Source of the DNA: Schmidtea nova
Lineage: Eukaryota
Length of the DNA: 64,000 nt
NCBI GenBank assembly: GCA_044892505.1
Contig: CM097882.1
Coordinates: 543,430,001-543,494,000, forward strand
Reading direction: 5' to 3'
The position numbers and the translations under genes are program-made. How positions within the stretch are numbered: the stretch's first letter is position 1; each line of letters starts with the position of its first letter. Positions 1 through 48,269 of the stretch are shown here, piece after piece. The notes under the pieces are model-generated. The model was not told the DNA's origin and searched no databases. It worked only from the letters and a program-made list of their open reading frames with translations.

Positions 1-3000
1 ACCTTGTTACCCGTCACTATGTAACGTTGGTACTGTAACAAGTGGGTGGGTATTCGCAATCAGTGAGCGTCGTCAATACGAAACTATGATTGACCGAATA
101 TCTCCTGGGTCCAAGGGCTACCGATAGAAGGTTTCTTGCCCATTTTGTCCCCTTCTTCGACGATTTATCTTTAAGCATTCAACAAAATTTTATCGGCAAT
201 TCAACATTAATATTCTACCTAACTATAAATTCGTGATTACATCCAAATAAATCATTCCGAGCATCAAAACACTAATAAAACATTAAATTTTACTTATATT
301 ATAATTTATGTTAATTATTAATGAAAGTATTCTAAAATAAAATTTTTAATTTACATTTGCATTTACGATAAAATCAAGACTTTAATTCTTAATTTGTGAA
401 TATTTATAACTAATTTACTTTTATAACTAATTGATATTCCGAAACAATTTGTTTCAATCCATCATTCAATCCACAACAAGCCGAACACCATTCAAATTCA
501 CCAAGCATAATTTTCTACGCAAATCATTTCTCTCTATTGGCAAAACAAGTAAATTTTTAAATTAATTGATATGCTGAAATTAATTCTTTTCATAGCCCTC
601 AATTTCAAAAACACAGGTGGAAACTCAGTTCGGAAATCTTAGCAACTACGTCTTATCACTTTAATCTATTTGACAGATTTGAATATCTAACAATTATCCA
701 AACCATTAATCCAATCGACAAATCCCAATTAATCAACAATCCGCGACAATGTCTAATGATCATGACTCCAATAAACCAGCGTTGTGGTCATCCATGTCAG
801 TGACAAATACTGCTTAACAATATCTTTTCTTAGTGCTGAATTTAATATATGTACTTTATTTGCATTTTTACTTTTTATGTAAAATGGTTTTTATCATACA
901 AAAGGGTAACAATTAATTATTTTAATTAAAATACTTAAAGTTTTGCTAGACGAAATATAATAATCTTTGAATTTCATGTGAAAATAAATTGATTGTCACT
1001 AGATGAAATATAATATTATTTTAAAATAATATACCAAATTTTACTTTAAAAGGCACCATAAATTCACAATAATACAATTTTTTAACTTAAACATTATTGA
1101 TTTTAAAGGCAATCTTGAAAACTTCCTAATATCCGTTACAAATAAAAAGGTTCCACACCAAATGTTTGTGGTGGGTGAATGGATGAAACCTTGGCATTGT
1201 CCTTCTGGAGGCATGCATGTCTACGCATGATGTGGGATACTATCATTTCGAGCTTGATTGTTGATACACTTTTACAGGTTTATTATGAATTTTTCATTGA
1301 TAGTGCAGGAGATTGTATGTGATTATATGTGTCTGTATGTTGACTTGAATGTTGGATGAGAATAAATAATTTATTGGTGGATGAGGTGTAGTATGATGAC
1401 TGTGTGTTCTATTGTTACTGTTGGGTTTGTGTGTGATTGTATGATGAGCGATTTAAAAACAATTGAGTGCTTGTGAGTGTGGTTGGACGTATAATTCTAA
1501 CTAGCATGTCTGTGTGAAATTTTTGGGGTAGCTGGTTGGTGTGTATGTGATTGTTGAATGTTATTGAGTGATACGGTGTAGGTGTGTCTATTGTATTTTA
1601 TACGTATGTTGTTTGTATATTAATATGGATGATGCTATTGAGTGAAAAGGGTGTAAATCTTTGCAATGGGTGATGTATTAGTATTTTAAGATGTCGTGGG
1701 GGGTTATATTATAAATTAAATAAATTGTATAAAATATTTCTAAAGTTAAAATAAAAATAAAAAAAAAATTTTTAAAGTTAAACTAATGGTAATGATTTTT
1801 AGATCAAGATAATAATAATAATTTTTAGATCGAAATAATAATAATATTTCTCATAATGCTTTTTTACAAATTTTTAAGTTTTAAAATTTCTACGAAAAAC
1901 AATTAACGATAAGGTTTATAATTTTTTATAATGTCGATTTGAATTTACAATTTTTATACTTTAAGAATAGAATAAAAAAAAATTTCTATAAAATCTCGAA
2001 TTCAGATTTTTTATAAAATAATAAAATTTATTAATATAATAATAAAATTTCAATCTAAATTTTCATGGGGTTTAATATAACTTTTGATTTTCAAATTCTC
2101 GGGAATTTTACGAAATGATAAAATCCTTTTATATATTAATAATATTAGGAACCAAATTTGGTTTACAATTTTTCCATATAAAATCTTTTCAACATAATAA
2201 AAAGCAAATTTCTATTTCTGATCCAAATGAAATGATAATAAATTTTTATCCATAAATTCAAGATCTAAATAAGCATTTAATCTAAAAAAACTTTACCTGC
2301 TAAATAAAAATAAAATAAAAATAAGTTATAAATTTTTCAACGAGTATTTTTAACCTCAAGCAAAGTAAATTTCGGTTTTGTTGAGCATGAATTTCCCAAC
2401 TAAGTGTGCGCGAACCTTTCGGGACACTTCACTCAGGAATTTCAGGCTCTCGAAAAACAAGATTCACAGGAAAACTTATTTAGACCATAATGAGCTTTAA
2501 TTCAGATTAAATCAATACTTGTTTCACAATTTGTTTCACTTCATGAGCATTATTCTAGACTTGAGCATTATTTCGAACCATTTTCTTTTCATCATCAGCA
2601 TCCATTTTTCTTGCATTTTCTTATGAGATGAACGTTGTTGAGAGTGCGAAGGTGAAGGCGAGTACGAGTCGATTTTTTAATCAATAATATTTCCTATTTT
2701 AGATTTCAAGACATGAGTTAGAAATTATTATGTTGTATTACGAAATTGCTTATGTAGATAATAAAAATATGATACTCTATTATAATACAAATCATTAGTA
2801 TAACAAAACCTTGCTCTTGGCCAAACCGCGATTCCCCAGTTGGGATGACGCGAATTTGGATGTATGAGCCTCACCTTAAAGTGGAAATATGGGCTGGCCG
2901 ATTACCAATCAGACAACGATCCACCCAGGCTACTAACAGATCCGCACAACCAAGGCTGGACGGATCGTCAGAAGATATGGGAGAAAAAAAAAAAAAAAAA

Positions 3001-4171
3001 TTTTTATTTATTTTCATAATTTAATTTAGTTATCGAATTTCAATGAGATCTTTCCTGAATTATTTTGGGAATTTGTGGCTCGTGATAATGATTATGACAA
3101 CAAAAAAGAAACTAAGCTATTAATCATGAAAATACTTTAATAATATAAAATTGACCATAATAAATAAAATGACAAATAACATATTAAATAAAAAAGGGGG
3201 GAATGGGATGATCGTCAGGCATGACGGACGACCATTCCAATCCCCAATGAGAATAACCAAAATCAAACAAATCCTTACGTTTGTCCAATTAACTTCTGCT
3301 ACGATTTCTTTCAAACAAATTAATTTTTTCTTAGAAATTTGGAACGATTTTTCCACAAATTTTCTTGGAATCAACTTCTGATAGTAACTTCTTGGAATCA
3401 AATTCTGATATTAGCTTTTCTCTTCTCTTCTTGAAATCAAATTAGCTTTTCTTCTTGCAATCAAATTCTCAAGTTGGATTTCACAAAAGTTATTTTTCGC
3501 AATTTCTCCGTAAATTAATCAAGAAAAATTTTCCACCAAATTCTGAAATCTGCCATTTTGATGGCGGTATATATACCATCAAATTTTTTCTATCTCCGGT
3601 AGTGCAATAAAACAAATTGTTCTAGAAGTTTCTCTTAATTTTTTCTAAATTAATTCTAATGATTTTCCGAAAATTAATTCCATATTTTTGTATAATAATT
3701 TTTTATAAACTATAAATAATTTATTTTAATTAAAAATTTTTATGTTTGAATCGAAATTTGTTCGATTTGATTTAATTTATGATTTTCGATCCATATTAAT
3801 TCTTTCTATTGTTATATGTGAAATTTTGTGATAAATTCACAATTTTCCTCTAGAATTGTGTTAATTTTTCTGCACTGAGGATTTTTATGACAAAATTCTG
3901 TTCTTTATGGGCACTTTCAATGGGTTTTCCGCCTATTCTAGCTTCCAAACATTCTGCTTTTAATTTCTCTCGAGATTTCCGTGGAAATATTTACAAATTC
4001 GCAGTTAGCGCGTACTCTACCGGTTGATGTATTTTGATTCCACTTCACCTTCTGATGCTTTCCGCTTAATTGTTAGATTTTTAATGGCAGCTAAGGCTAA
4101 AATGAAATCTTGCGCGCTCTCTACCTATTGGGTTATCGTTTTATTAAAACAAATTGCGTTTTGGCCCAACA
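1..4171 (-). repeat. 3' LTR (partial, continues left of window)
   Basis: Matches 24387-28558 and diverges right after ...ttggcccaaca at 4171. In spot checks the only difference found was an A9 vs A10 homopolymer (about 1974-1982 vs 26360-26369). Confidence 0.93.
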
Positions 4172-5274: not shown

Positions 5275-7212
5275 TTACACCAACGTCTCCTGAGGGCCGA
5301 AATGTAGGTTTCGCATTCCCCCATATAATTCATTTGTAGTTCGATATATATCTGCTTCTATTATTGACGGATTTATCGTTGGTGGTAGTCCTTGCATCCA
5401 CATTCCATTGAATTCTGATCCATTGCATATCTCATATTCGTCTTCCGTCTTTACTTCTTCTAAACTGATTCCATATTCGAACTTCTCGATGCTTGGCCAC
5501 TGTCTCTTTCTTTTCGTTTTTCTTTTACATCTTCCAGTGATTTTTGCATGTTGTGTGAGAATCAAAACCAATATTGCGCCTATTATTCCGGCAGTTATCC
5601 ATATCATTTTGATTGCTATTTTTGATTCCTCTACTGCTGCTGATATTGTTGTTGGAGATTCCGTTGTTGTTTGTACGATTTTGATCGGTCTCCCTCCTTG
5701 AATTATTCGTTCGGCTTCTTCCTCCGATATATATTTATTATAAACTGTTGGTTTGGTTGTTGTTAGTATTTGATCTTCTATACTGAATTCTCTGGTATCG
5801 TCTACTCGTCTAGGTAATTTCGAAATAAATTGACATGTTGGATCTTCATTTAATTTTTTGTAGAGGCATACCCGGTATTTAGTTCCTCGTTCCCATCCGG
5901 CTACATAATATTCCTCTTCTTCAATGAATGATTTTTCTTCTTTATTGCTCACACTTTTACACTTTTCTTGTTGTAGTTTTACTTCATAAATGCATATTCT
6001 AGCAATAAGATGTCCTTGTACGTTCTTGACTTTTATAATATCATTTTGAAAGAATTTTTCGGTTTCCTTTTGTATTTGGTTTGGAGTGATTGATATTTCT
6101 ATTTCTTTTCTGTAACCTTTGACTATCGTTGGTTTTTCTGTTACAGTTATTGTTGCTCTTGGGAGTCTTATTGCTTTTTCATCCGGTTCTCTCCCGCTTT
6201 CTGTGCTTGTTATTATTTGTTCTGTCGTGGTGTGTTCTTGACAAATTGGGACGAAAGTTCTCCATATGCATATTAGATACGTTGTTTTTGATTCTAACTC
6301 TTTGATTATCATTTGCTCCTTTCCCTTTACTGACTGTTGATAACATTTGCTAGGGTTGTCAAGCCCACTATTCATATCGACCTTTCTCCAACAAACCTTT
6401 TTGATTACTTCCTCGTGGTTGTTTATTAGTATTATTTCCGTGGATTTCGTTTCTACTATCAGAGGGTAATACGTAGTTGTTCCACTGGTTGTTGTAGTTG
6501 TCGTTATGATTTCCTTGGTGGGTTTTTCTAGACATAGTTTTTGTGTCCATATTCTTCTTATGCATATCGTATAGCTTGTTCCTGGCTTCAATCCTGGTAT
6601 TCTGAATTTTCCATTTTGGCCTGTCATTTGAAATTTACACGATAATTGTCTGTCCTTATTTTGCATATGGATGGTTTTTATCCAACAAATTTGAGTTATA
6701 GGCTCTCTCACATTGTTTGTTACCATCATTTCTTTTTCTTTCACTTCTATTGTTGTTTTGTTCTGGATCGTCATCATAACCTTTTTATCTTGTTCTTCTT
6801 CTTCGTTTTCTTCTTCATTTTCATCTATTGGGGTTTTTGTGACACTTTGTATTTTTTCTAGCCTGTTCCTCTCGTTTCCCATTTTCGTAATCATTTCTTT
6901 AGCTGCACAGATTGCTCTTATTTGATTTGTTCGATATATACATATTATATATGTTGTTCCTGATTCGAGTTTTTCGACCTTTTGTTCTTCTCCTATTGCT
7001 AATGCTGTTCTTATGCATTTCTGGTGATCACTGACTCCATTTTTCCGTATTGCAACTGTACATATTTTAATTATTAGCTCTCCTTTGATATTCGTTATCC
7101 ATATATTTTCTGTATCTGTAACTATTCTTGCCTCTGCTCTCCTCTGATCAAATATATAATCGATTGCTTTCACCCAATTCAACATTGTCAATAATATTGT
7201 CATAATTATTGT
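5275..7212 (-). other. C-terminal type-I membrane module: signal-like peptide, four Cys-containing FN3-like repeats, TM helix, cytoplasmic tail
   Basis: IIMTILLTMLNWVKA/ID at 7165-7212. Repeats end LESGTTYIICI, LKPGTSYTICI, LESKTTYLICI, WERGTKYRVCL. TM IWITAGIIGAILVLIL (5556-5604) is followed by a basic stop-transfer KRKTKRKR, and the protein ends ETLV*. Confidence 0.72.
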
Positions 7213-10200
7213 ATTTTTACCTGGATTTTTAAGTAGACATACCGTTCGATTTTCATAGTTGGAATTTTCTTGTTCATTCTTGTTCTCTTTATTTTCATCT
7301 TTGTTTTCATTGTTTTTATTCTCCCATTTCTCACTGTTTCCGTGATTTCCGTGATCACTGTTATCATCATTTTGCTGCTGTTCGTTGCTATCGTTGTCTT
7401 CATCGTCTGGTTTATCGTTTGATTTATCGTCATCGGGGTCGTTTAGATCACCCTCGGTTTCTTTTGAAATGTCGTCCTCGACATTTATATCCTTTATTAT
7501 TTCCCAATACAATTTGATAATTCTTTGTTCATCTAGTTTTATTTCACCCATTTTGCATTTCAATGTTCCAGCATCGTCGTGGAGATAACTCTTGTCTTTA
7601 TTTTTGATCTTTTTTCGCCATTCTTTAACCAATTCAAGTAGTTTTTCTCTCTTTGTTTTTATTTTCATTTCTTCGTTTGGCTTGTTTGTGAATCTGAAAT
7701 CTGGTCTTTTTAGTAGTGCTTTTGCTACTCTAGGTAATGTCCAATTTTCAATCAAAGCTCGCTCCATTAACACATTTTTATCATATTTGAACTCGTTGTT
7801 CACATTCATCAGTCCTTCTCCAGAGAGTGGATCTTTCCATTTTATCATTTTTGAAGCTACTATTTCATCTTTTCTTATCACTGCCCTTAATAATGGCTTT
7901 GGATTTAAACTCAGTATTTCGATGTCCTCTTGACTTGCTTTTGATAAAAGATACTTGGCTATTGTATAATAAGGTGATCTGTAGACATATGATAATACAG
8001 TTTCATTGTTGTTATCCCTTTCTTTGATACTTGACCCTGTTCTTAATAACTCCTCGATTAAGTCTTTGGACCCTCCTTCTTCTACCGCTAGCATTAATGG
8101 TGTTTGTCCTTTCCAATTTTTTATATTCGAGTGTTGTCCGCATCTTTCCATGAGTTTAATTATTTCCATAGCTCTTTTTCCTTCTCCCTTCCTCAAGGCT
8201 ACATTTAGTGGTGTTTCCTCATTAAAATCAGTCATTGTAAATAATATTGGCATCCGCTCCTTGATTATATCAATGAAATTTGGTGTTGCCTTTCCTCTGG
8301 CATACTCATTTATTATCCGATTTAGTCCGTTTATTATTTCGAATACGTGTTTGCCTTCTGTCCATTCCGGCATAATTTCTTTTGCTGTTCCTATTATCAG
8401 ATCCATTTCTTTTATATGTTCCATTCTCGCATCATCCGTTATTTTTTGCTTAATTTTTAATGTTGGACTTCTCATCTTTGGTGCAAAGAATGTTGCTCCA
8501 CAACATCCACATCCTTTACTCTTTCTAAGCATGCATATTTGTCTTGTCTGTGATCTGGTCATTATCCTCCTTTCCTCTGGTTCTTTTGTCGCAGTTTTTT
8601 CTACTCGTTTACATCTACACACGTTCACGTATATCGGTCGAACTAACGGATTGTTGACTAATTTTACCCGGATGTTATTTTCGCTAACAAATATGACTTC
8701 ATATGGTCCTTTTCCCGTTCTCTGTAATTTTTTCGCTGTTCCTGGGATGATTTCTGGTGTTTCGACTATCACCCAATCGCCTAGCTTGAACTGATGTTCG
8801 TGTACATTTCTCTTTTTGTCATGTAGTTCTTTGTAGCTCTCTTGATTGAATCGTATATTCATACCTGCAACTTTCCAAATTTCTTGCATTCGCTCCTTGA
8901 ATTTTGTTACGTAATCGTCGATTTCCATATATTGTGATATTGGTGGTTGATATTCAAGATCCATTGGCATGTTACATTCTCTGCCGTACATCAATTTAAA
9001 CGGACTCATTTTTGTTGCCGAGTGAATCGACATACGGTATGCCATTAGACATAGATTCACATATTCATCCCAATCCTTTTGGTGTTTACTGACATAATTT
9101 GACATCATCTCAATCAATATTCCGTTAAATCTCTCCGTTTGTCCATTTGTTTGGGGGTGATATGGTGAAGTTCTCAACTTAGCAATTCTGAAATAATTGG
9201 TAACTTCGTTGATGATCTCGCTCATAAAATTTGTTCCTTGATCGGTTAATATTTGTTTTGGTGTTCCATATCTACAACATATTTCTTCGACTAATATTTT
9301 GGCTATTGTTCTAGCTTTCTGATCTGGCATTGCAAATGCTTCTGGGAATTTTGTTAAGTAATCAGTTATTACTAATATATAAACATTTCCATGATTCGTT
9401 TCTGGTAATGGTCCTACTACATCCATTGCGATCATTGTCATAGGTTCTGGTGGAATTGGCATTGGTTTTAAAGGTGTTTTCATTTTACTGCCAGTGCTTT
9501 TTCGCGTTGCACATATTAAACAATTCCTAATCCATTCTTTCACATCTTCTCCAATATTTGGCCAAAAATACTTCTGTTTTAATCTCGCTTCCGTTTTCTT
9601 AGCTGACATATGTCCACCAAGTTTTCCATCGTGGTATTGCATCAAGATGTCTTTCCTTCTACCTTCTGGTAAACACATGAGTCTTTTTTCTCCGTCCATT
9701 GCTAATAACCAGCCTTTTTCGATTGTATATTTGTGCCTGTTTTTCTCCATATGCTCCTTTAGTTGGCTGTTATGATCAAAGATTTTCATATCATTCTTAT
9801 TCAAATATTCGATGATTAATTTTAGCTCTTCATCTTCATTTTGTTCTTGTTGTAGTTTAGTGAAATCAATATCTTCTGCGATTATCATACATATTCGCCT
9901 GACATCTTTATCCATTAGTTCCTCAAACATAAACCTTGACATGCAATCCGCATTTGCATTCGCTTTCCCTGACTTGAACTTTATATATGGCGAATATTCT
10001 TGCAGCTGCATTGCCCATCTCATTAATCTGCTTGACGCTTCTTTGTGCTGGCCTAACCATACTAACGGTTGATGATCTGTTGTGATGTATATTTCGTGAC
10101 CCCATAATAGATATTTGAAATGTTTAATCGCCTGAATGATTGCTAGCGCTTCTCTTTCCGTTACCGAGTAATTCTTCTCGTGTTTTCGAAAGGTTTTGCT

Positions 10201-13200
10201 GTAATATCCTATCACTCTTTCTCTCCCATCTTCATCCCATTGTCCTAGTACGGCTCCTGACGCGTATCCACTTGCGTCGGTTGCTAATAGAAATGGTTTT
10301 TTGAAATCTGGGTGTACTAATATTGGCGATGAAATTAACTTGTCTCGCAACTCTTCAAATGCATTTTGTTGCTCTCTTTCCCAGATAAATGGTGTATCTT
10401 TCTTGACTAGCTCTTGTACAGGCTTTGCAATTCCGGCATAGTTTTTAATAAATTTCCGATAATAACCACATAGTCCTAAAAATTCTTGTACTTGGGTTAT
10501 GGTTTTCGGTATAGGACAATTTTTTATCTTTTCGATATTTCTTGGGTCCGGCTCTTTTCCTTTAGCTGATACAATGTGACCCAAAAAGGTAACTTTTGGT
10601 TTTGCCCAATCACATTTTGATGGTTTCAATTTTAATTTCCATTGCCTTAATCGGATGAATACGTTTTGGATATCTTGTAAATGTTGTTCAAACGTACCCG
10701 AGTAAATCAATAAATCGTCAATATATACCATACATTGTTTTATCCCGTGAGTTACAAAATTCATGCATCTTTGAAATGACGCAGGTGCATTAGTTAAACC
10801 AAATGGCATCTTCTTGAACTGGTACAGATCTTTTCCGATGGTAAACGCTGTTTTCTCTCTGTCCTCTTCTTTCACTTTAATCTGCCAGTAACCGCTTTTC
10901 AAATCTAATGACGTGAAGTATGCTGCACCATGTAATGTTTGTAACATTTCGTTGATATCTGGTAACGGGTATGTATCTCTCTTGGTTACTGCGTTCAATT
11001 GTCGATAATCAATACAAAATCGTTGGGTACCATCTTTCTTTTTTACCATTACTACTGGAAATTGCCATGGTGAACAACTTGGTTCAATCACATCTGCGTC
11101 TAACATCTTTTGCACTTCGGCTTCGGCCACTGCTTTCTGCGCCTCTGCTAGTCGATATGGTCTCAATGTGATCGGTGTTTCGTCTGTTAGGGGAATAGTA
11201 TGTTGAGTTACATCACTCGTTCCCAAGTCTAAATCTGATGCTGCAAAGATGTCTTTAAATTCTAACAATACTGTTTTTAGTTTTTCTTTTTCAATATCGT
11301 TTAAAATTTCACTGTCGATTACCCATAACTCCTCCACTTTACTTTCATCCTCTTGAATTTTAGGTAATTCAATATTCATCATCGGGGTTAATTTTCCCAA
11401 TCTCTCATTTTCGTAAATGATTTTGTCTTCCTCATCGAAATTGGTGATGTTGATTGGTATTTCGTTTTCTTTATTGACGTTCACTATTTCTCTTGCCAAT
11501 GGTAACTCTTTTCTCATCTCAAAATTTTGATTTGGCTCAAATATCATTTCCCCGACTGCCGTGTCTTTTACTTTGGTGAAACATATCATTTGCGTTCTTC
11601 CTGGTACGACAATTTTCTTTGAACACCTTACTTCCGTTTTCATTGAACAGATTTGTCCGCTTTTATCTTTCAATCTCATCGTACTCAAATCGATAACAAT
11701 CTCCTTTAATAATTCTGGCATTAAGTCTGTACCAATGATACATGAGGCACCCAATTGTTTTATTACAGCTAAATAAGTAGACATCTCTACGTCTTTATAC
11801 TTAATATCTGACCATATTTTCCCAATAACTTTGACTGATTCTTTATTGCACGTGACCACATCCATTGGTGCTTCTTCAATGCAAGGCCATAACATGCCTG
11901 GTATCATGTTCATGTTTATTGCTGATATATTTGCACCGGTATCTATCATTGCATCCATTTCAACACCGTTGATTTCAATGGCAATAGTAAGGGTTGGTCC
12001 AGCTGATGTTCTCATCATGGCTATTGTCATTGTTTCTAGATTTTTCTCTTCGCTTTGTGGTCTGTTTAGTATTGTTGGGTCTGGTCTGTTTAGTATTGCC
12101 GGGTCAATCATTGCCCAATTTGGTTCGTAATGTGCTGGGTAGAAATTTGGCATTGGTAACATTCGTAGTCCAGCTCGTGTTTTTTCTCTCACTGTTCCTG
12201 GTCTTTGTGGGTTAGGGTATGTCATTGGTGGTAAATTTTGACCTTCCCATTGTTTTGATTTTTCTGCTTCCCATATTGGTGCGGTACCATTTGATCCGGA
12301 GTTCGTTCCTCCTTGATTTCCTTTGTCATCGTTATCACTATCGTCATCATCCGAATCTTTCCTTCGGTTATCCCACCATCTTTTCCATCCACTAGGTCTG
12401 GTTTCTTTATATTTCGTTCTCTCTGCTTCGTTTTTCATAATGAATCTAAATTTTCTACCGATCTCTTCGTCGGTTCCTTTCATCTTGGTCAATATTCCAA
12501 TTAACCTCTTTATTCTATGAATGTCTTTTGAATGCCCATGCAATACCATAGTTTTAGCCAAAAATGGTAGGAATCCAAGTGCCATTTTCCAATTGATTTG
12601 TCTCTCTCTTTTATAGATATCAAAACAAGCTAGCATCTGAGTTATAATAACTCTGACTATTTGAATAATTAGGATTATCCCTAATATTCCTGCCATCATC
12701 TGTCCAAATACTAAGAATCTTCCCCACATGGCTTTCATCATATTATTGGTTGCGTGTTTAAAATGTTCTGGTGACAACAATAACTCGTAGTTCGGACTTC
12801 CCACGAAATTTGTTCCACCGGTTATGGCTATAATATTTGATAATACTGCTTGTCTTTGGGTTGGAAATAGTATATGCTTTCTCGCTGCTTCTAAATCTGC
12901 ATCTCTGTACACTCCACTGTGTGAAATATCTATGGGTTTAAATTCTATTTCTGTTGTTAACTCTGTTAATCCAAATCGTTTAGGTGCTGATACAATTTGC
13001 CGATTTGGAAAAACTACCCATTTTGCATTTCCCATGTCATACATTGGTCCATACGCATTACTGCAATTGAACTGATGGGGTTCGTAATTTGGTGGATTTA
13101 TTATTCTCGTTACTGCTTGTACAAATCGACTTCTTCCCTTGTAGAATATTTCCAATTCGTTAGTACATCGGTTTTCTGGTATTCTTGGTCTTTCCGGTAG

Positions 13201-16200
13201 TCTTGCTATCTCTTTTTTGCATTTGTATGTATACATAACTTCTCCCACAATTCGACCGAAATGTCCTTCTTGCAGTGGTAATAGTGGTATTGCGTTATCT
13301 GGATTCGTTATAGCCATTGCTAATTTGGTTCTCAAAATTTCTCTGTTCAATATACAATCGTTTTGTATCAAATCATGATATACTTTCTCTGTGGTTGCCA
13401 TACCTCTATGGTATAAGAAATCCATTTTATTATTTGCGTACAAATACGTTTTAATGTCCACTGTATCTGGTTTTGGTGCTGCTTCAGCTATCACTGTTGT
13501 AGATAGGAAAATTCCTTTGTAATTCGTTTTTATTACTAATCTTCCGCATTTACTGACGGTTTCACCTTTGATGAATCTCATTCCCACTCCTGGATCTTTT
13601 GCTAAAATTGTTGTTGATATAATTGCTGTTGGTGTATTTACTAATTTAAGTTTTTCCGTCGTCTCTTTATGCTGGAATGTTCTTGTTCTTTTGAGCTGTT
13701 CCATTTCTTGTCTGGTTGAATCATCTTTGGGCTCGTCATAAACTTTTCCTAGTATTTCCTCGAATTCAGCTTCTTGTAATAACATTAGTCGACATTTATT
13801 CGCATCTGCCTTATAAATCAATGTTGATGCACCAGTATTACACGAGGTATGTTCTGCAGAACAACTTGGGAATTTTCTCATTGATAGCGTGTCTGGATCA
13901 AAATATCCCGGATATGTTTCTAGTTTCACTTGATACATCTCTATTACTACTACATTGCTGACCACTTTTCCTAATAGAGTGTATGCTCCTCCTTTACAAC
14001 TTCCGTCCGGTTTATTGACGTATCCGGCTGCATAAACTCTTGTTATTTTAATTGCTCCTGGTTGGGCAGCTATTATTATGTTTCCTGCTAACGATATCCG
14101 TTTTGAGGTAAACGCTTCATTGCACTTTTCGCTATCCAGTGATATTACGGTTGATTCCATTCCTGGTTCGATAATTGTTGAATATGAATATTGTCCACAG
14201 TAATACGCAAATAACTTTCTCGTAACCGTGCATTCTCTTATTTCTGCTTTGATGAGGTCTGATTCCTGATACACGTTGTAACTTATTTTATTCACAATTC
14301 TTTCCAATTTTTTCGGCGTGGCTTGTTTACAATCTTCCGTATCTTTTAATGAATATTTCTCGCTAAGCTCGATTTTGTCACAATCGTATACCACAAACGC
14401 TGTTGCTCCCTTTATGCACATCATCCAAATCAATATTGTGGTCAATATCGCATTCATACTCTTCCCATATGTTTTTTGATCGCGAAAATTCATTGATCCT
14501 TCGAATTCTGTTAATAATTCTCTCAACTTTACTTGCATGGTTTCTGTTTGATCTATTTTATCTACTGAGTTGATGAATGTTTTCCAACCTCCTTGTTTCA
14601 TTACATACGGCTCTATCAGTTTCTCAATGATTTCCGTTATTGTGAATATATGACCATTTGAACTGTATCTGGGTGTTCTCCGTTTGTACAAGACGATCAT
14701 ATTGTACATTAAATATGCCAAGCTTACTAAATATTTTGCTGGTTCGTTCGTGTTGTTTGTTAATTTTTCGATAATTTCTTTCATTTCTGCAGGATTTCTC
14801 AACGTCATTCGTACTTTTCCTTCGATGATTTTTGAGATTATTGGTTTAATCGTTATCCACAGTTGTTTGGCTTCTTGTTGGATGTGGTCTCTTTTTAACG
14901 CTCTTTTTATTTCTGGGTTTGCCAATGCAAGCATATCAGATACTAATTCATTTATCCATCGGATTCCTTGTTCGGTTATTGGTGTATTACCTTTCACTTG
15001 ATTTGCAACTGACACTAGTTTGCTTACTTTTAGTTGTAATTGTTCCGTCCTGCTTACTGATGTTGGTTTTTGATTTCTTTCTGTTTGATCTTTCGCCGGC
15101 CTCCCTCTTGGGCGTTTATCTATCATCGTTCCAGCTTCTCGTCTACTTAGCTGATTATTCGCGATTTCTCTCGATGTTGTCGCTCCTCTATCTGTGATCC
15201 AATTACTCCATTCGTCAGTTGTAGAATTTTCTCTTGCTCGTTTTTGTACTTTTTCTCGGTCGGTTTCATCATCGGTTGCTGTGATTTTTTGCCGTTTTAC
15301 CCAAGGAATTCTCTGGTCATCGGTTGTTGTTTCATTTTCTATGTTTGAGAATAAATCCCCTGAGTAAAATGCTGTTTCATCGTTTTCTCTATTCGCAATA
15401 TTTGTCAGTTCTTCTAATACGTCTTCATCAGTTGTTTCGACAATAATTTCACTTGCAGCTTCCGGTATTTCTGGTTCGTCTAAATTTCCGAATAATTTTC
15501 TCATTTGGGTTCGATTTCCCTCTTTTCTGATTAGTTCATTGCCTGCAATTTTAGAAACAGTTAAATGATTACTTGTTCCGATTCGTATCGGGGTTACACC
15601 AATTTCTATCTCATCATCGAGTGATCTTCCTTCGTACTGTAGATGAAATGGTAATTCAAATGGCAGTTTCTTTTTAATCTCTTTTATTTTCGTGGTTGCC
15701 AATACTTCCATTTCTTCCTTTCCAAAGTCTGGAAAATGGATTTTTAATCCACATTTTTGCGGTTCGTCACTTTCCCATTCCATTTGCCTCCATTTTCTTC
15801 TAAGCTCATCGAATTGTTCTGGATACCAAGTGTATACTCGTCCATATTCCTCGATTTCCTTCACGAGCATTGTCATGGTTAATCTATCCTTGCCATTCTC
15901 GAGAATCCATTTTGCTAATTCGACTACCGCTCTTCGTTGATTTTTGGCACCTTTTTCTAAAATATCGATTAACTGTCTACTTTTTTGGGCTTCAGTTCTC
16001 TCTAATACTTCAGGGTCCATCAGTTCATCCATATCTACAGGACGTAATCTCGAGGTTGTTTCTTGTTTTCTTAGCACGCTGATTCTGGGAATTGTCAGCT
16101 TTTCCCTTACGTCTTCCTCAATTTTGCATGAAACATAAATATCTCCTTCACTTTGATATCGAGATTTTTTATCTAATAGCAAGTGTTGCAAGATAAATTT

Positions 16201-19200
16201 TGGTGCTCCTGATGCTATATTTTCCTCTTTTTCTGGTTTATGATAGCAGCTGCAGAGCTTTTCTGGATAAATTTCTTCACTATGACCCTTCTCTGAATTG
16301 TAGGATGATCCTATAGACAATGTTACTTTTTGATCGAACGGCCATGTTAATTCCTCGTCATTGATCCCTTTACAGATGATATAAAATAATGACGTATGAG
16401 TTCCTTTACCAACTCCATCTCCGTTTGGATAAATTCTCATTTTTAATTTATATCCGCCTGGGTAAGTGTAAAATTGTGGGCTTGTCAATCGCGTTACTTC
16501 ACCCTCCTTTGCTGCTCTCACTTTATCTGCCCAATTTGAAATTCTCCATTTGAATGGTGCAAGATATTTCTCTTCGCATATGTTCTCGTCGACTTCCAAA
16601 TGTTTCCCAGTTATTTCTGATGGTTCGTAAATCTCATGGGTTTCCTCATATAACAGTTCCTCAGGTATTCGTTCTGGTTCACATGTTACCCATCTATCCT
16701 CCACATTTGGTTGTTCCCATCTGTATCGATTTTCTAATTCTATCCATGTCTTTATCCACGGCGTTGGTTTACAATCTCCATAATGAAGAGGTTTTATTTT
16801 CCCCTTTATTTCATTATCCGCTCTCCAAAAATTATATAAATCGATTATCTGGTCTAGTTTTCCGACCATTTTTCTTTTAAATCTCCTCACGTGACCATCG
16901 TCTTTCTCTGGTTCGTCCATTGCCCATATTTTAACTGTTTGACCGTCTTCCCAAATACCCAGTTTATATAAAGGTGTCTGATCATCTTTTTCTAATACAT
17001 GTTTATTGTACACGATTATTACATCTTCTATTAATCCGTCATCACTATTTTGTTTCACGTTATGCATAATTTTCTCATCGATTATCCGTATGAATTCGTC
17101 TACCGTACAATCTGGTTCTATTTCAATTGTTTGTTCGTCTCCACTTGGCAACGTTAGATTGACTTTTATCGTTTCCGCTCGATTCTTTGATCTCTGATAG
17201 CCGCCATATTGACTTATTAATTCGATTGCTCGTTTATCATCTAATCTCACTAACTCGGTATCTCGTACGAACTCTACAAATCTCTTCATTGATGCTGGTC
17301 TTCTTCTATTTATACTATCGATCATTTTCCTCGTCTGGTCTATTGCTTGTGTCGAAAGCATTAATCGATTTTCCCATATTGCTTGTTCGGCCAATTTTAA
17401 TAATTTTGGTCCGATTTCATAATCGTATCTATCTCCAATTCTTGTCAGTAGTTTCATCACCGTTTCTTCAATCGCGTTCTTCTTTAACGTTAAGATATTC
17501 AACTCGTTCGGCCATATCATAGCATCTACTAGATGTATTCCCTTTTTGATTCGCCAATTATTCAAATAAAGATAATCGTTTTTAAAACTGCTACCCATTT
17601 TCTCTTGCATCCAGTCATATAATGCGTTAGTATTTGGGTCGTTTATTTTTATTCCTAATACATCGATTTCGGGGTGGTGTACTTCTATCGTATACTCTTG
17701 AGTTGGCGTTTCTTTTAATTGCTTCTTGTATTCCGCTATTGAGTTGTTCCACGCTGCGGTGAATACTTGATTTTCTACCTGATTTGCTTGGGTGACTTCC
17801 TTCATAAACTTCTGATATACTTTTTCATCAATAAACTCCCGATTCTTCATGGCTAATTCAACCTTGCCTGTTACTTCTCCGATGATATTCCAATCGTCTT
17901 CACTTAGCAACGCGTTGCTTGATGTTTCGGTATCACTTTCTTCGCTAGCCAAAGGTGCTTTTAAATCGTTGTTTTCCTCACTTGACGGAAATAAGTCACC
18001 TCCTAAACTACTTACTTCGCTAATCTCGTCTTCTGGATCTGTTTGATCATCATTTCGCATTCTCATCATATTTATTTTATACACATTTTTAAGATCTCTT
18101 TCTTTTTCCTTTTGCGTTCTTGCTTGTGACCAATTCATTGTTGCGTCCCATCGTTTTCTTTTCAGTGCTTCTACTTCTTCATCTGTCAATGTGTTATTCG
18201 CTTTTCGAATTGAAGCTTCAATTTTCTGCAGTAGTGCTCGTTGAAGTCGGTTTCTGGTTATAATTTTTTGAGCTTTCTTTGTGATCTCTTCAACTTCTTC
18301 AGTGCTAGTTTTTTCCAATTTCTGATTTAACTTTCCTACTTCATTCGCGACAATAGTTGTTATTTTCTGTTCTATTTCCTTCGCTTTTATTTTCACTATT
18401 TCTTCCAATTCCTCACAGGTGTTGCAAACATTCCCACTGTCTCTTTTTTCTTTTCTTCTTTGATTATATTCTTGAATGAATATTTTCCTTTCTTCTTCGT
18501 TCATTGATTTTATTGAAACTTCGAATTCTCCATCTTTTTCATTAATCTCTACATCTGGTAACTCTGTTATCATTTCCTTCACTTTTTCTATTACATTCTT
18601 CTGCAATTTACTCATTTCCTCTGGATCTTCTTTATCTTCGCTTTTAACTCTCATCATGTTAATTTGCCTTGTGTTATTTCCTCGATTTTTCCATCTCTCT
18701 TCAATTTCCCGTGCTTCCTCCAACTGAAGTCTCTGCCATTCTGCTTGTTGTTTCGTTTGATTTTTGTTCGTCCTTAACTTGTGAGGCTCGGTGATTTGCA
18801 AAGCATTAATTCTTGGCTGTTGTGGTTGGCTGACTGTTGTTCGTTCGATTAATTCTCTCAGTTGTTCAAGTTCCTGCATCACATTGATTTGTGGTGTTTG
18901 ATTTTGGTTTTCGGTTCGCTGTGGTGCATTGACTTGGTTTGGGCATTCTCTCGCCATATGTCCAGGTTGTTGGCATTTGAAACAATTGGCGTTTCTTCTA
19001 AAATTTCCTCCATTATTGTTATTTCTTACGTAGTAATTTCCTGCACTAGCATTTACGGTTCTGCATACATTTTCTGTATGACCTTTTCTACCACAACTTT
19101 GACATGTTTTAGTGCTATAACATTCATGACTCAGATGTCCAGATTTTTGACAAATGTTACATATTTTGCTGGTGAATAAATTGTTATTCCCGTAATTATT

Positions 19201-22488: not shown

Positions 22489-22815
22489 TTATGAACAAAA
22501 TACTACGATTTTGTCATCAGTTGTCTGTTTGCAGATTACACATCTCTTTATTTCTCTAGAGCACGGCTGGCAATAATACAAATGCCCACACGGCATGAAT
22601 AAAATGTTCGCTTCTCTTTGTCGACAAATATAACATCCTTCGAACAAATCGATCTGTTGATTTATCGATCTCTCTAGCTTGTCCATAATTTTATCGATTT
22701 TACCAATCCATTCTTGTATTTTTAAATTAAAACTCGGATTATTCGGTCGCAATCGTCGTAATTCATAAATTGTCTCTAACGAAATATTGTTTGTTGTTCC
22801 TACAATTCCTTTCAT
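22489..22815 (-). CDS. Small IAP-like C3HC4 RING finger protein (108 aa from first ATG) in element leader
   Basis: CYICRQREANILFMPCGHLYYCQPCSREIKRCVICKQTTDDKIVVFCS* fits the IAP/MGRN-type RING with an aromatic C-terminal tail. The ORF-track start at 22848 is GTG; the first ATG is at 22815. Confidence 0.85.
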   Translation of the reverse strand: MKGIVGTTNNISLETIYELRRLRPNNPSFNLKIQEWIGKIDKIMDKLERSINQQIDLFEGCYICRQREANILFMPCGHLYYCQPCSREIKRCVICKQTTDDKIVVFCS

Positions 22816-22974
22816 TTCATTTTCTCGTTCGAATCTCTCGCTCAACACTCAATTCACCGTAACATATGCTCAATCGCTTCCATCTAAAATATTCATGATG
22901 ATCGGTGTTTATAACTTTTTGAATTAACCATTCATTATGATTTGAACGAAAAATAAATAATAAATTATATTTTT

Positions 22975-24133: not shown

Positions 24134-27100
24134 AGTAAAATCAAACACAATTTTCCGCTGTTTCTGTCAAAATTTTATTTAACAGTTTGTTGATGTTTTA
24201 TGAAAACTTTCATTAAGTCTCGCGCGAACTCGTTTTAGTTGCTTTTCGATTTTTTCAAGCAAAACAAACTCAAATCCCGGCTGAGCCCCCAAATTTTTAT
24301 ATGGTGGGTCGTTGATCGTCAATATGACCTTGACGTTGCTATGGCCCTCATCAACAACCCAACACACAAAAATATTGAAATTTACCACCTTGTTACCCGT
24401 CACTATGTAACGTTGGTACTGTAACAAGTGGGTGGGTATTCGCAATCAGTGAGCGTCGTCAATACGAAACTATGATTGACCGAATATCTCCTGGGTCCAA
24501 GGGCTACCGATAGAAGGTTTCTTGCCCATTTTGTCCCCTTCTTCGACGATTTATCTTTAAGCATTCAACAAAATTTTATCGGCAATTCAACATTAATATT
24601 CTACCTAACTATAAATTCGTGATTACATCCAAATAAATCATTCCGAGCATCAAAACACTAATAAAACATTAAATTTTACTTATATTATAATTTATGTTAA
24701 TTATTAATGAAAGTATTCTAAAATAAAATTTTTAATTTACATTTGCATTTACGATAAAATCAAGACTTTAATTCTTAATTTGTGAATATTTATAACTAAT
24801 TTACTTTTATAACTAATTGATATTCCGAAACAATTTGTTTCAATCCATCATTCAATCCACAACAAGCCGAACACCATTCAAATTCACCAAGCATAATTTT
24901 CTACGCAAATCATTTCTCTCTATTGGCAAAACAAGTAAATTTTTAAATTAATTGATATGCTGAAATTAATTCTTTTCATAGCCCTCAATTTCAAAAACAC
25001 AGGTGGAAACTCAGTTCGGAAATCTTAGCAACTACGTCTTATCACTTTAATCTATTTGACAGATTTGAATATCTAACAATTATCCAAACCATTAATCCAA
25101 TCGACAAATCCCAATTAATCAACAATCCGCGACAATGTCTAATGATCATGACTCCAATAAACCAGCGTTGTGGTCATCCATGTCAGTGACAAATACTGCT
25201 TAACAATATCTTTTCTTAGTGCTGAATTTAATATATGTACTTTATTTGCATTTTTACTTTTTATGTAAAATGGTTTTTATCATACAAAAGGGTAACAATT
25301 AATTATTTTAATTAAAATACTTAAAGTTTTGCTAGACGAAATATAATAATCTTTGAATTTCATGTGAAAATAAATTGATTGTCACTAGATGAAATATAAT
25401 ATTATTTTAAAATAATATACCAAATTTTACTTTAAAAGGCACCATAAATTCACAATAATACAATTTTTTAACTTAAACATTATTGATTTTAAAGGCAATC
25501 TTGAAAACTTCCTAATATCCGTTACAAATAAAAAGGTTCCACACCAAATGTTTGTGGTGGGTGAATGGATGAAACCTTGGCATTGTCCTTCTGGAGGCAT
25601 GCATGTCTACGCATGATGTGGGATACTATCATTTCGAGCTTGATTGTTGATACACTTTTACAGGTTTATTATGAATTTTTCATTGATAGTGCAGGAGATT
25701 GTATGTGATTATATGTGTCTGTATGTTGACTTGAATGTTGGATGAGAATAAATAATTTATTGGTGGATGAGGTGTAGTATGATGACTGTGTGTTCTATTG
25801 TTACTGTTGGGTTTGTGTGTGATTGTATGATGAGCGATTTAAAAACAATTGAGTGCTTGTGAGTGTGGTTGGACGTATAATTCTAACTAGCATGTCTGTG
25901 TGAAATTTTTGGGGTAGCTGGTTGGTGTGTATGTGATTGTTGAATGTTATTGAGTGATACGGTGTAGGTGTGTCTATTGTATTTTATACGTATGTTGTTT
26001 GTATATTAATATGGATGATGCTATTGAGTGAAAAGGGTGTAAATCTTTGCAATGGGTGATGTATTAGTATTTTAAGATGTCGTGGGGGGTTATATTATAA
26101 ATTAAATAAATTGTATAAAATATTTCTAAAGTTAAAATAAAAATAAAAAAAAAATTTTTAAAGTTAAACTAATGGTAATGATTTTTAGATCAAGATAATA
26201 ATAATAATTTTTAGATCGAAATAATAATAATATTTCTCATAATGCTTTTTTACAAATTTTTAAGTTTTAAAATTTCTACGAAAAACAATTAACGATAAGG
26301 TTTATAATTTTTTATAATGTCGATTTGAATTTACAATTTTTATACTTTAAGAATAGAATAAAAAAAAAATTTCTATAAAATCTCGAATTCAGATTTTTTA
26401 TAAAATAATAAAATTTATTAATATAATAATAAAATTTCAATCTAAATTTTCATGGGGTTTAATATAACTTTTGATTTTCAAATTCTCGGGAATTTTACGA
26501 AATGATAAAATCCTTTTATATATTAATAATATTAGGAACCAAATTTGGTTTACAATTTTTCCATATAAAATCTTTTCAACATAATAAAAAGCAAATTTCT
26601 ATTTCTGATCCAAATGAAATGATAATAAATTTTTATCCATAAATTCAAGATCTAAATAAGCATTTAATCTAAAAAAACTTTACCTGCTAAATAAAAATAA
26701 AATAAAAATAAGTTATAAATTTTTCAACGAGTATTTTTAACCTCAAGCAAAGTAAATTTCGGTTTTGTTGAGCATGAATTTCCCAACTAAGTGTGCGCGA
26801 ACCTTTCGGGACACTTCACTCAGGAATTTCAGGCTCTCGAAAAACAAGATTCACAGGAAAACTTATTTAGACCATAATGAGCTTTAATTCAGATTAAATC
26901 AATACTTGTTTCACAATTTGTTTCACTTCATGAGCATTATTCTAGACTTGAGCATTATTTCGAACCATTTTCTTTTCATCATCAGCATCCATTTTTCTTG
27001 CATTTTCTTATGAGATGAACGTTGTTGAGAGTGCGAAGGTGAAGGCGAGTACGAGTCGATTTTTTAATCAATAATATTTCCTATTTTAGATTTCAAGACA

Positions 27101-48225: not shown

Positions 48226-48269
48226 AATAAAACGCGTATAAAGGTTATAATTCTAGTTAGTTTTAATAT

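What the first reader, a model, noticed from the sequence alone, without database searches (positions are those of the whole stretch)
5275..7212. Second surface protein: four Cys-patterned FN3-like repeats, TM, and tail ending in class-I PDZ ligand ETLV
Seen: four ~75-aa repeats (about 6885-7140, 6515-6750, 6230-6465, 5835-6045) each with C-W/x...C...L.xGT.Y.IC...C, Thr-rich linkers, TM, and a Tyr-containing tail ending -ETLV. Known: L.PGT.Y.iC is the FN3 motif of FLRT/LRFN-type adhesion proteins, and viral E6/Tax end in ETxV PDZ ligands. Inference: an attachment protein complementing the fusogen (a two-component entry system) or a receptor decoy that engages polarity scaffolds.
Basis: partly seen in the sequence, partly recalled or inferred. 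Interest (0 to 1): 0.8.

Follow-up and report, generated by a model that had tools for sequence, protein, structure and literature searches.

The report
Second membrane glycoprotein of Burro-type retroelement
The stretch encodes the membrane-anchored tail end of one giant gag-env-pol polyprotein of a planarian-type (Burro-like) endogenous retrovirus-like element: four disulfide-braced fibronectin-III domains, a membrane anchor and a tail ending in a PDZ-binding motif that distant relatives also keep, which makes it a likely second, fast-evolving surface protein beside the element's fusion protein.

Summary
Window 5278-7212 (-) encodes four significantly similar ~80-aa repeats, each with four invariant Cys and a T-x-Y-x-x-C core. 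They are followed by Thr-rich linkers, one strong TM segment and a 93-aa Tyr-bearing tail ending ETLV-stop.

It is not a separate gene. It is residues 4286-4930 of an uninterrupted 4930-codon ORF (20067..5275, -) ordered Gag, MATH, mononegavirus-G-like fusogen, PR-RT-RH-IN, ankyrin. Direct repeats of at least 4.17 kb at 99.98% identity flank it. This matches the published Burro/GYPSM1 giant gypsy elements of planarians.

Pfam, a PDB profile search and an AlphaFold model (pLDDT 81; top 50 Foldseek hits all FN3) support an FN3 fold.

No relative of the module turned up among 1.84 billion representative proteins. Ten related single-ORF Gag-G-Pol polyproteins do carry an analogous post-integrase module in nine cases: hydrophobic leader, Cys-patterned ectodomain, TM, tail. 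Counting the query, six of the ten such modules end in [S/T]-x-V.

In these relatives the module diverges far faster than G or pol.

My best reading is an accessory, non-fusogenic surface glycoprotein with a PDZ-scaffold-targeting tail. The attachment role remains inferred.

The parts
5275..20067 (-). Single uninterrupted 4930-codon polyprotein ORF of the element. The finding is its last 645 codons.
   Evidence: 4930 aa with 0 internal stops. Pfam map.
7165..7212 (-). Internal signal-peptide-like segment (aa 4286-4301): Lys-bearing n-region, ~10-residue hydrophobic core, small residues at -3/-1.
   Evidence: KD(11) = 2.42, one of only three segments in the whole ORF reaching that value. Sequence. 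Cleavage is inferred.
6877..7134 (-). FN3-like repeat 1 (aa 4312-4397), four Cys.
6760..6876 (-). Acidic (Glu/Asn-rich) linker between repeats 1 and 2.
6502..6759 (-). FN3-like repeat 2 (aa 4437-4522), the repeat that was modelled.
   Evidence: Pfam fn3. AF2 pLDDT 81.2 with 7 strands. Foldseek top 50 hits all FN3.
6466..6501 (-). Thr-rich linker between repeats 2 and 3 (mucin-like; O-glycosylation is inferred).
6211..6465 (-). FN3-like repeat 3 (aa 4535-4619).
5803..6066 (-). FN3-like repeat 4 (aa 4668-4755), the most divergent, with a longer C-F insert.
5614..5802 (-). Cys-free membrane-proximal stalk with Thr-rich stretches (aa 4756-4818).
5557..5613 (-). Transmembrane segment (aa 4819-4837).
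   Evidence: KD(19) = 2.44. Basic residues follow it.
5278..5556 (-). Cytoplasmic tail of 93 aa with four Tyr. The last four residues, ETLV (nt 5278-5289), have the class I PDZ-ligand form. Stop at 5275-5277.
   Evidence: Motif definition from PMC4810129.
12541..14448 (-). G-type (Monjiviricetes_fusion, PF24664) fusion glycoprotein module with its own leader (aa 1874-1892) and TM (aa 2457-2475), in frame between gag and pol.
   Evidence: (E 1.3e-69).
18937..19806 (-). Gag (Retrotrans_gag plus CCHC zinc knuckle).
16120..16554 (-). MATH/TRAF-like domain.
9154..11985 (-). Protease, reverse transcriptase, RNase H and integrase.
7936..8166 (-). Ankyrin repeats, followed by an Asp/Asn/Glu-rich linker up to the module.
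1..4171 (-). 3' LTR, cut by the window start. It begins with TG at 4171 in element orientation.
   Evidence: 4172 nt, 99.976% identical to 24387-28558.
24387..28558 (-). 5' LTR. Its inner end is not determinable because the other copy is cut by the window edge. The N run at 23977-24133 was left untouched.
22489..22848 (-). Accessory 119-aa ORF with an IAP-type RING finger, in the leader between the 5' LTR and the main ORF.
   Evidence: zf-C3HC4_3, E 2e-13.

Best explanation
The region encodes an accessory, non-fusogenic type I surface glycoprotein. It is made as the C-terminal module of the single gag-env-pol polyprotein of a Burro-type giant Ty3/gypsy endogenous retrovirus-like element.

Proposed working:
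1. The ORF holds four hydrophobic segments that alternate: G leader, G anchor, module leader, module anchor. This would put both ectodomains in the ER lumen, while Gag, the enzymes, the ankyrin segment and both tails stay cytosolic.
2. Signal peptidase would free the module after its leader.
3. Four disulfide-braced FN3 domains, on acidic or Thr-rich (probably O-glycosylated) linkers, would project from the membrane.
4. The cytosolic tail presents a free C-terminal S/T-x-V motif to PDZ scaffold proteins. This would hold the protein at particular membrane domains such as junctions or cell-cell contacts.

The module is the fastest-evolving part of the element family and G is among the slowest. 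I therefore read the module as the variable host-contacting (attachment or contact-targeting) partner of the conserved fusogen.

Shown here: ORF continuity, repeats, predicted FN3 fold, hydrophobic segments, the motif, and conservation of layout and motif in relatives despite rapid divergence.

Inferred: signal cleavage, glycosylation, surface or particle location, PDZ binding, and the attachment or targeting role.
For: - One 4930-codon ORF with the module in frame.
- Domain map Gag-MATH-G-PR-RT-RH-IN-Ank.
- LTRs of at least 4172 nt at 99.98% identity bound the element, so the module is internal to it.
- Four significant repeats with 16 Cys in a fixed pattern.
- FN3 fold: Pfam fn3 28.9 bits against a cutoff of 25. 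A profile of the repeats hits only FN3 chains in PDB. AF2 gives pLDDT 81.2 and pTM 0.69 with 7 strands. The Foldseek top 50 are all FN3, TMq up to 0.70.
- The leader-like segment and the TM are two of only three segments reaching KD(11) of 2.42 or more.
- Basic residues follow the TM.
- Relatives P0003-P0015 (41-46% pol identity) are also single-ORF Gag-G-Pol. Nine of ten carry a post-IN module of leader, Cys-patterned tandem units, TM and tail.
- Counting the query, six of the ten modules with TM and tail end [S/T]-x-V, against 0 of 22 control polyproteins. The internal frequency of that tripeptide in the tails is 10/797.
- Tails that share the ending are only 24-26% identical.
- Divergence: G/pol/module identity is 93/88/56% in P0007-P0009, 95/83/37% in P0010-P0012 and 68/67/23% in P0007-P0014.
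- Published precedents for PDZ-binding motifs on viral envelope glycoprotein tails: HTLV-1 Env-DLG1 (trafficking and cell-cell fusion) and rabies G (PMC4810129).
Against: - No sequence relative of the module itself was found. hhalign finds no homology between its repeats and the relatives' units (probability 0.4-7.8%). The modules could therefore be independent acquisitions rather than one fast-evolving gene.
- G-type class III fusogens are known to bind receptors and fuse on their own (established knowledge). A separate attachment protein is not required.
- The ectodomain has only one N-x-S/T sequon in 517 aa.
- The leader is weaker than in the relatives: its KD(19) is below 1.6.
- Four relatives' modules end differently.
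- The fold model rests on a 4-row alignment of paralogous repeats. The full-length single-sequence model was useless (pLDDT 31.9).
- There are no expression or protein data, and no other copies of this element were compared.
- A 5'-to-3' fall in identity between close relatives could reflect recombination rather than selection.
Confidence: 0.5

Rival explanations
1. A captured, host-derived FN3 receptor or adhesion-like gene. It would act inside or on the producing cell as a signalling mimic, decoy or interference factor (for example modulating polarity, survival or superinfection) rather than as a particle or attachment component.
For: - The element carries other host-like modulators: MATH/TRAF, ankyrin and an IAP-type RING ORF.
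- The literature notes BIR and BCL2-like motifs in Burro (PMC6431247).
- FN3-TM-Tyr-tail-PDZ-ligand is a typical host receptor layout. The Foldseek hits are host receptors such as PTPRM, insulin receptor, Robo3 and CDO/BOC.
- Ectodomain types differ among relatives, as expected from repeated captures.
Against: - No cellular homologue was found among 1.84 billion representatives. The only hit is a motif-level match to a bacterial repeat protein.
- The same position, layout and terminal motif recur across relatives, which argues for an ancestral element function.
- Very fast divergence beside a conserved fusogen fits a host-contacting surface better than a mimic of a conserved host pathway.
Confidence: 0.25
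2. The terminal S/T-x-V is mainly an ER-export or trafficking signal and not a PDZ ligand. A C-terminal valine is known to promote ER exit of some type I membrane proteins (my own knowledge, not checked in a paper here). The protein's role would then not involve polarity scaffolds.
For: Valine is invariant at position 0 in all six motif-bearing termini. Position -3 varies (E, T, A), so specificity beyond S/T-x-V is loose.
Against: Position -2 is S or T in all six. A valine-only export signal does not need that, and it is the defining class I PDZ feature (PMC4810129). The two roles are not exclusive.
Confidence: 0.15
3. A largely unconstrained C-terminal extension, that is, drifting read-through sequence of a very young insertion with no function of its own.
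For: - The LTRs are 99.98% identical, so an open frame in this copy alone proves little.
- The module is the least conserved part in relatives.
- No homologues were found.
Against: - Four repeats keep 16 Cys in register and fold confidently as FN3.
- Relatives at 41-46% pol identity all keep long open post-IN regions. Nine of ten have leader, Cys units, TM and tail, and five of those nine end in the same terminal motif.
- The summed-count estimate (composition rate 0.0048, see slip 1) gave about 2e-12 for at least 6 of 10.
- By my own arithmetic from the per-tail rate 10/797, the chance expectation for the motif is about 8e-10 for at least 6 of 10, or about 9e-7 for at least 4 of 7 lineages.
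Confidence: 0.05

Closest known systems
Burro / GYPSM1 giant Ty3/gypsy LTR retroelements of planarians (Grohme 2018; Jurka 2007; Arkhipova and Yushenova 2019, PMC6431247)
   Same: - Long LTRs and a total size near 30 kb in an AT-rich genome.
- One ORF of about 4.9 kaa: 4873 aa published, 4930 aa here.
- Gag with CCHC, MATH/TRAF, a mononegavirus-type env in frame between gag and pol, PR-RT-RH-IN, ankyrin and RING-type motifs.
   Different: - Sequence identity to the published elements was not measured.
- The BCL2-like, Ubi2 and dUTPase motifs, which were reported from HHpred, were not recovered by Pfam hmmscan.
- The held papers do not mention a C-terminal FN3/TM/PDZ-ligand module.
HTLV-1 Env and rabies virus G cytoplasmic tails with C-terminal PDZ-binding motifs (review PMC4810129)
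   Same: A viral or retroviral type I envelope glycoprotein whose cytosolic tail ends in a class I S/T-x-hydrophobic motif. For HTLV-1 Env the motif binds DLG1 and influences trafficking and cell-cell fusion at contact sites.
   Different: In those viruses the motif sits on the fusogen itself. Here it sits on a separate, non-fusogenic FN3 module. There is no sequence relationship, and binding was not tested.
Two-glycoprotein entry systems (paramyxovirus attachment protein plus F; herpesvirus gB plus accessory glycoproteins). From established knowledge.
   Same: A conserved fusogen is paired with a more variable second membrane glycoprotein. The rate contrast is seen here.
   Different: No homology was found. 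Paramyxovirus attachment proteins are type II with a propeller head. Rhabdovirus-type G normally needs no partner.
Host FN3-TM-tail receptors and adhesion proteins
   Same: FN3 fold with the L-x-x-G-T-x-Y F-strand motif. These are the best structural and profile hits. Some such receptors end in PDZ ligands (own knowledge).
   Different: - No LRR, Ig, kinase or phosphatase domain is present.
- A four-Cys pattern on strands B, C, F and G is present in every repeat.
- Sequence similarity is only at motif level (E 0.003-2).
sORF2 of Drosophila MDG1-group LTR retrotransposons (PMC11952523)
   Same: An accessory transmembrane protein of an LTR retroelement that is tied to cell-to-cell transfer.
   Different: sORF2 is a short FAST-like protein in elements that lack Env. 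This module is 645 aa, FN3-based and coexists with a G-type fusogen.
Planarian secretory cell nidovirus polyprotein (PMC6211748)
   Same: A single-ORF giant polyprotein in a planarian host with an ankyrin domain, a Thr-rich region and fibronectin-named domains in its downstream part.
   Different: It is an RNA virus, its domains are FN type II rather than type III, and no homology was tested. The parallel is one of organisation only.

Membership tests
Fibronectin type III domain (PF00041 / FN3 fold) | Sequence match to the family profile above its curated cutoff. | tested here: met
   For the 645-aa piece: 28.9 bits against a cutoff of 25, E 1.3e-6. The match is marginal. Repeat 2 alone scores 17 bits, and repeats 1, 3 and 4 alone give no hit.
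Fibronectin type III domain (PF00041 / FN3 fold) | Seven-strand beta-sandwich that superposes on solved FN3 domains. | tested here: met
   AF2 model of repeat 2: pLDDT 81.2 with 7 strands. Foldseek PDB top 50 are all FN3, probability 1.00, TMq 0.51-0.70. The model rests on a 4-row alignment.
Fibronectin type III domain (PF00041 / FN3 fold) | Conserved B-strand Trp and F-strand Tyr. | tested here: inconclusive
   Tyr is invariant in all four repeats. Trp follows the first Cys only in repeats 2 and 3.
Class I PDZ-binding motif (S/T-x-hydrophobic-COOH) | S/T at -2 and a hydrophobic residue at the free C-terminus. | tested here: met
   The ORF ends ETLV and then the stop. The definition comes from PMC4810129.
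Class I PDZ-binding motif (S/T-x-hydrophobic-COOH) | The C-terminus is exposed to the cytosol. | tested here: inconclusive
   Topology is inferred from a single strong TM with basic residues on its C-terminal side and a leader upstream. No experimental topology exists.
Class I PDZ-binding motif (S/T-x-hydrophobic-COOH) | The motif is conserved among relatives. | tested here: met
   Counting the query, 6 of 10 modules with TM and tail end [S/T]-x-V. None of 22 controls does. Copies of the same element were not compared.
Class I PDZ-binding motif (S/T-x-hydrophobic-COOH) | Physical binding to a PDZ domain. | not testable with these tools
   No binding data are available.
Burro-type giant Ty3/gypsy element | LTR-bounded element with one giant ORF ordered gag-env-pol plus accessory domains. 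| tested here: met
   compared with the description in PMC6431247.
Burro-type giant Ty3/gypsy element | Sequence identity to published Burro/GYPSM1. | not tested
Viral membrane fusion glycoprotein (is the module itself a fusogen?) | Match to a fusogen family, or fusion loops/peptide and a refolding core. | tested here: not met
   Pfam gives only FN3-type hits for the module. The fusogen signal (PF24664) lies elsewhere, at aa 2167-2486.
   No LRR family appears in Pfam even at E up to 10. No FLRT or LRFN chain is among the listed PDB sequence or fold hits.

The most novel reading that the evidence does not exclude
A clade of single-ORF gag-G-pol retroelements uses a two-glycoprotein surface apparatus. 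A conserved G-type fusogen is paired with a hypervariable, modular second glycoprotein (FN3-based here). The conserved PDZ-ligand tail of the second glycoprotein docks it to junction or polarity scaffolds. Transfer of the element would then be directed through specific cell-cell contacts, for example towards stem or germ cells. The ectodomain would evolve under an arms race or by shifts in the host surface it contacts.
Probability: 0.3. Interest if true: 0.8.

Novelty: new variant of a known kind. Interest (0 to 1): 0.58.

Why it matters
Burro-type elements are among the largest retroelements known and make up a large share of planarian genomes. About half of their polyprotein is unannotated in the literature I could read.

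Three results give a concrete hypothesis for how such elements might move between cells:
- The last 13% of the polyprotein is a folded, membrane-anchored FN3 protein.
- An analogous module recurs in distant relatives.
- In six of the ten modules one tail feature, a PDZ-ligand ending, survives while the rest of the module diverges strongly.

The hypothesis can be checked with descriptive data that already exist for planarians: transcriptomes, single-cell atlases and proteomes.

The finding also extends the short list of viral envelope proteins with PDZ-binding tails to an invertebrate retroelement lineage.

Tried and rejected
Searches and models that gave nothing useful:
- Word-index protein search with the module inside the whole ORF, and with the module alone: no hit.
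- Exhaustive HMMER search of 1.84 billion representatives: one hit, P0001. It is a bacterial CarboxypepD_reg repeat protein matched only through a G-x-Y-T-L-C-type strand motif. I rejected it as a relative.
- Single-sequence AlphaFold of all 645 aa: pLDDT 31.9, unusable.
- phmmer of the module against PDB: only E 0.2-1.2 FN3 hits. The repeat profile did better.
- BFVD fold search: only generic FN3 domains of phages and giant viruses, and no related viral envelope protein.
- HMM of the four repeats and hhalign against the relatives' Cys-patterned units: no homology.
- tblastn of the polyprotein against the rest of the window: no second copy.
- Pfam on the unannotated stretches of the polyprotein: nothing significant. 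The sub-threshold AT_hook, ATLF, CobT and OTU1_UBXL hits were discarded as noise.
- I looked for a splice acceptor upstream of the module's leader. None is obvious, and a donor-like AG|GTAAAA lies there instead. The expression route is left open.

Considered and rejected:
- A separate gene: there is no boundary.
- The end of a host gene read into the element: the module lies inside the LTR-bounded interior.

1. In one search my script joined the ten tail sequences in memory to get one composition figure. Nothing was printed or saved. This goes against the rule on stringing stretches together. The chance estimates I rely on use the per-tail count 10/797; the composition-based 2e-12 is quoted once, only to flag it.
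Full report
**1. What is at the coordinates**

The finding's interval is not a gene of its own. The ORF listing shows one open frame on the minus strand from 20067 to 5275, 4930 codons with no internal stop. The finding covers its last 645 codons (aa 4286-4930).

The translation shows, in order:
- an Asp/Asn/Glu-rich linker;
- a short hydrophobic leader-like segment;
- four Cys-containing repeats separated by an acidic linker, a Thr-rich linker and two Cys-free spacers;
- a strong hydrophobic segment;
- a 93-residue tail ending ETLV and then the stop.

**2. Is it more than chance**

- The 16 ectodomain Cys fall into four groups spaced 15/25/11, 16/25/10, 16/25/9 and 11/31/11.
- Alignments A1 and A2 have the four Cys and the T and Y of a T-x-Y-x-x-C core invariant.
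- Pairwise local alignment scores exceed 1000 shuffles with z from 3.5 to 14.3.

**3. The fold**

- Pfam fn3 scores 28.9 bits for the 645-aa piece (cutoff 25, E 1.3e-6). Only repeat 2 scores on its own, at 17 bits.
- A profile of the four repeats, searched against PDB sequences, returns 19 chains that are all FN3 domains. They include fibronectin, Tie2, Tencon, EphA8, titin and pikachurin, at E 0.003-2.
- AlphaFold on the whole module without an alignment failed (pLDDT 31.9).
- With the four repeats aligned to each other, repeat 2 gave pLDDT 81.2 and pTM 0.69 with seven strands.
- The Cys lie on the strands I assign as B, C, F and G.
- Foldseek against PDB lists only FN3 domains in the top 50, with probability 1.00 and TMq up to 0.70. 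Hits include KIAA0343 FN3, PTPRM, insulin receptor FnIII, Robo3 and CDO/BOC.
- BFVD gives only generic FN3 domains of phages and giant viruses.
- The beta-sandwich/FN3 reading is therefore supported.
- Nothing links the repeats specifically to FLRT/LRFN, and no LRR domain is present.

**4. Context: what element this is**

- Pfam on the whole ORF gives Retrotrans_gag and a CCHC knuckle, a MATH/TRAF domain, Monjiviricetes_fusion (PF24664, E 1.3e-69), retropepsin, RT, RNase H, integrase and ankyrin repeats. The FN3 module follows.
- Window 1-4171 and 24387-28558 are 99.976% identical over 4172 nt. They begin with TG in element orientation. They are LTRs of at least 4.17 kb, and the left one is cut by the window edge.
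- The span in view is therefore about 28.6 kb, in DNA of 17-37% GC.
- A 119-aa ORF with an IAP-type RING lies in the leader.
- This matches the published description of the Burro/GYPSM1 giant gypsy elements of the planarian Schmidtea mediterranea. [quoted passage not shown] The genome is more than 70% A/T with Burro elements over 30 kb (PMC11410931).
- A 2026 survey also reports GAG-ENV-POL order in Platyhelminthes, Nematoda and Bryozoa (PMC13524379).
- None of these texts mentions a C-terminal membrane module.
- I did not measure identity to published Burro sequences.
- In this copy the main ORF shows no stops. There are no breaks to count.

**5. Relatives**

- The module alone has no detectable relative.
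  - Two word-index searches were blank.
  - The exhaustive search of 1.84 billion representatives gave one motif-level hit to a bacterial CarboxypepD_reg repeat protein. I reject it as a relative.
- Searching with the G-to-integrase part of the ORF found ten long polyproteins from metagenome contigs with PF24664 plus PR-RT-IN in one frame. They are P0003, P0004, P0005, P0007, P0009, P0010, P0011, P0012, P0014 and P0015, at 41-46% identity over pol.
- All ten have 309-723 residues after the integrase.
- In nine of them this extension contains a strongly hydrophobic leader, a Cys-bearing ectodomain, a TM near the end and a 36-122-residue tail with basic residues after the TM.
- Their ectodomains are also built from tandem Cys-patterned units: 13-13-3 twice in P0007/P0009/P0014, 20 twice in P0003/P0005, and 18-16-10 in P0010/P0012.
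- These units are not detectably homologous to the FN3 repeats here.
- Several relatives have an extra aspartic-protease domain where this element has ankyrin.

**6. The tail motif**

- The C-termini are ETLV (query), ESSV, ATFV, TTLV, ATTV and TSWV. That is six of the ten modules with TM and tail ending [S/T]-x-V, the class I PDZ-ligand form as defined in PMC4810129.
- The others end YEVV, IQRM, KLTK and DALF. P0004 lacks a TM and may be incomplete.
- None of 22 other long retroelement polyproteins from the same search ends that way.
- Within the tails the tripeptide occurs at 10 of 797 positions. At that rate, at least 6 of 10 has a probability of about 8e-10. Counting conservatively at least 4 of 7 lineages gives about 9e-7. 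Both figures are my arithmetic.
- The motif persists where little else does. P0007/P0014 tails are 24% identical and P0003/P0005 tails are 26% identical.
Relatives pass it at the level of motif class. Copies of this same element were not examined.

**7. Rates**

| Pair | G identity | pol identity | module identity |
|---|---|---|---|
| P0007 / P0009 | 93% | 88% | 56% |
| P0010 / P0012 | 95% | 83% | 37% |
| P0007 / P0014 | 68% | 67% | 23% |
| P0003 / P0005 | 52% | 66% | 22% |

The module is by far the most variable part and the fusogen is among the least variable. Without DNA I cannot separate diversifying selection from relaxed constraint or from recombination.

**8. How it most likely works**

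- The ORF has four hydrophobic segments in alternating order:
  - G leader, aa 1874-1892;
  - G anchor, aa 2457-2475;
  - module leader, aa 4286-4301;
  - module anchor, aa 4819-4837.
- Translated as one chain, this puts both ectodomains in the ER lumen and Gag, the enzymes, ankyrin and both tails in the cytosol. This is the logic of other viral polyproteins with internal signals (established knowledge).
- Signal-peptidase cleavage after the leader (small residues at -3/-1) would release a type I protein. It would comprise four FN3 domains on flexible, probably O-glycosylated linkers, a TM, and a tail with a PDZ ligand.
- The closest published precedent is the HTLV-1 Env tail. Its PDZ-binding motif binds DLG1 and affects trafficking and cell-cell fusion at contact sites. 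Rabies G is a second case (PMC4810129).
- An accessory TM protein that directs cell-to-cell transfer of LTR retrotransposons is also known in Drosophila (PMC11952523).
- I therefore read the module as a non-fusogenic, variable surface partner of the conserved fusogen, positioned by PDZ scaffolds.
- A separate subgenomic or spliced mRNA is an alternative route of expression. I found no acceptor-like site upstream of the leader, only a donor-like AG|GTAAAA. This stays open.

**9. Rivals**

The rivals are given in their own section with evidence:
- a captured host receptor-like modulator or decoy;
- a terminal valine acting only as an ER-export signal;
- an unconstrained extension.

The main weaknesses of my preferred reading are:
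- the modules of relatives are not demonstrably homologous;
- G-type fusogens need no partner;
- sequons are scarce, 1 in 517 aa;
- there are no expression or protein data.

**10. Limits and slips**

- N runs were left as they are.

**11. Verdict**

- The element is a known kind (Burro-type).
- The C-terminal FN3/TM/PDZ-ligand module, and its recurrence as a hypervariable second membrane protein in related single-ORF Gag-G-Pol elements, appear undescribed in the literature I could search. I class it as a new variant of a known kind.

Noticed in passing
window 22489-22848 (-): A 119-aa ORF with an IAP-type RING finger (zf-C3HC4_3, E 2e-13) lies in the leader between the 5' LTR and the main ORF. 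It is probably the RING/AIR1-type accessory motif noted for Burro.
   Followed up: partly
window 20907-21559: A tandem array with a period of about 24-26 nt (19 or more overlapping copies) lies in the element's 5' leader, upstream of gag.
   Followed up: no
window 1-4171 and 24387-28558: The LTRs are at least 4172 nt long and 99.976% identical, so the insertion is very young. The left LTR is cut by the window start. An N run (23977-24133) sits next to the inner end of the right LTR.
   Followed up: partly
window 29186-29367: About ten tandem copies of a 13-nt unit containing a TGAGTCA core lie roughly 630 nt outside the 5' LTR.
   Followed up: no
window 7215-7230 (-): A donor-like AG|GTAAAA lies just upstream of the module's leader codons. 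No acceptor-like tract was seen. Its relevance to a subgenomic RNA is unknown.
   Followed up: no
P0007 aa 3082-3179; P0014 aa 3354-3446: Relatives carry an additional aspartic-protease domain directly after the integrase, at the position where this element has ankyrin repeats.
   Followed up: partly
window ORF aa 1893-2456 and 4302-4818: Both predicted luminal ectodomains have about 0.2 N-x-S/T sequons per 100 aa. The predicted cytosolic parts have 0.4-1.0 per 100 aa. The relatives' modules have up to 3.2 per 100 aa.
   Followed up: no
P0007/P0009 and P0010/P0012 (whole proteins): Identity falls from G to pol to the module along the polyprotein (93/88/56% and 95/83/37%). A 5'-to-3' gradient like this could indicate recombination among lineages.
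   Followed up: no
window 48226-48604 and 53663-54044: A 380-nt direct repeat at 88% identity lies outside the element. The ORFs at 40466-41158 (-) and 56199-56627 (-) have no Pfam match.
   Followed up: partly
literature (PMC6211748): The planarian nidovirus PSCNV also encodes a single giant polyprotein with ankyrin, Thr-rich and fibronectin (type II) segments in its downstream part. This is an organisational parallel in the same host group.
   Followed up: no
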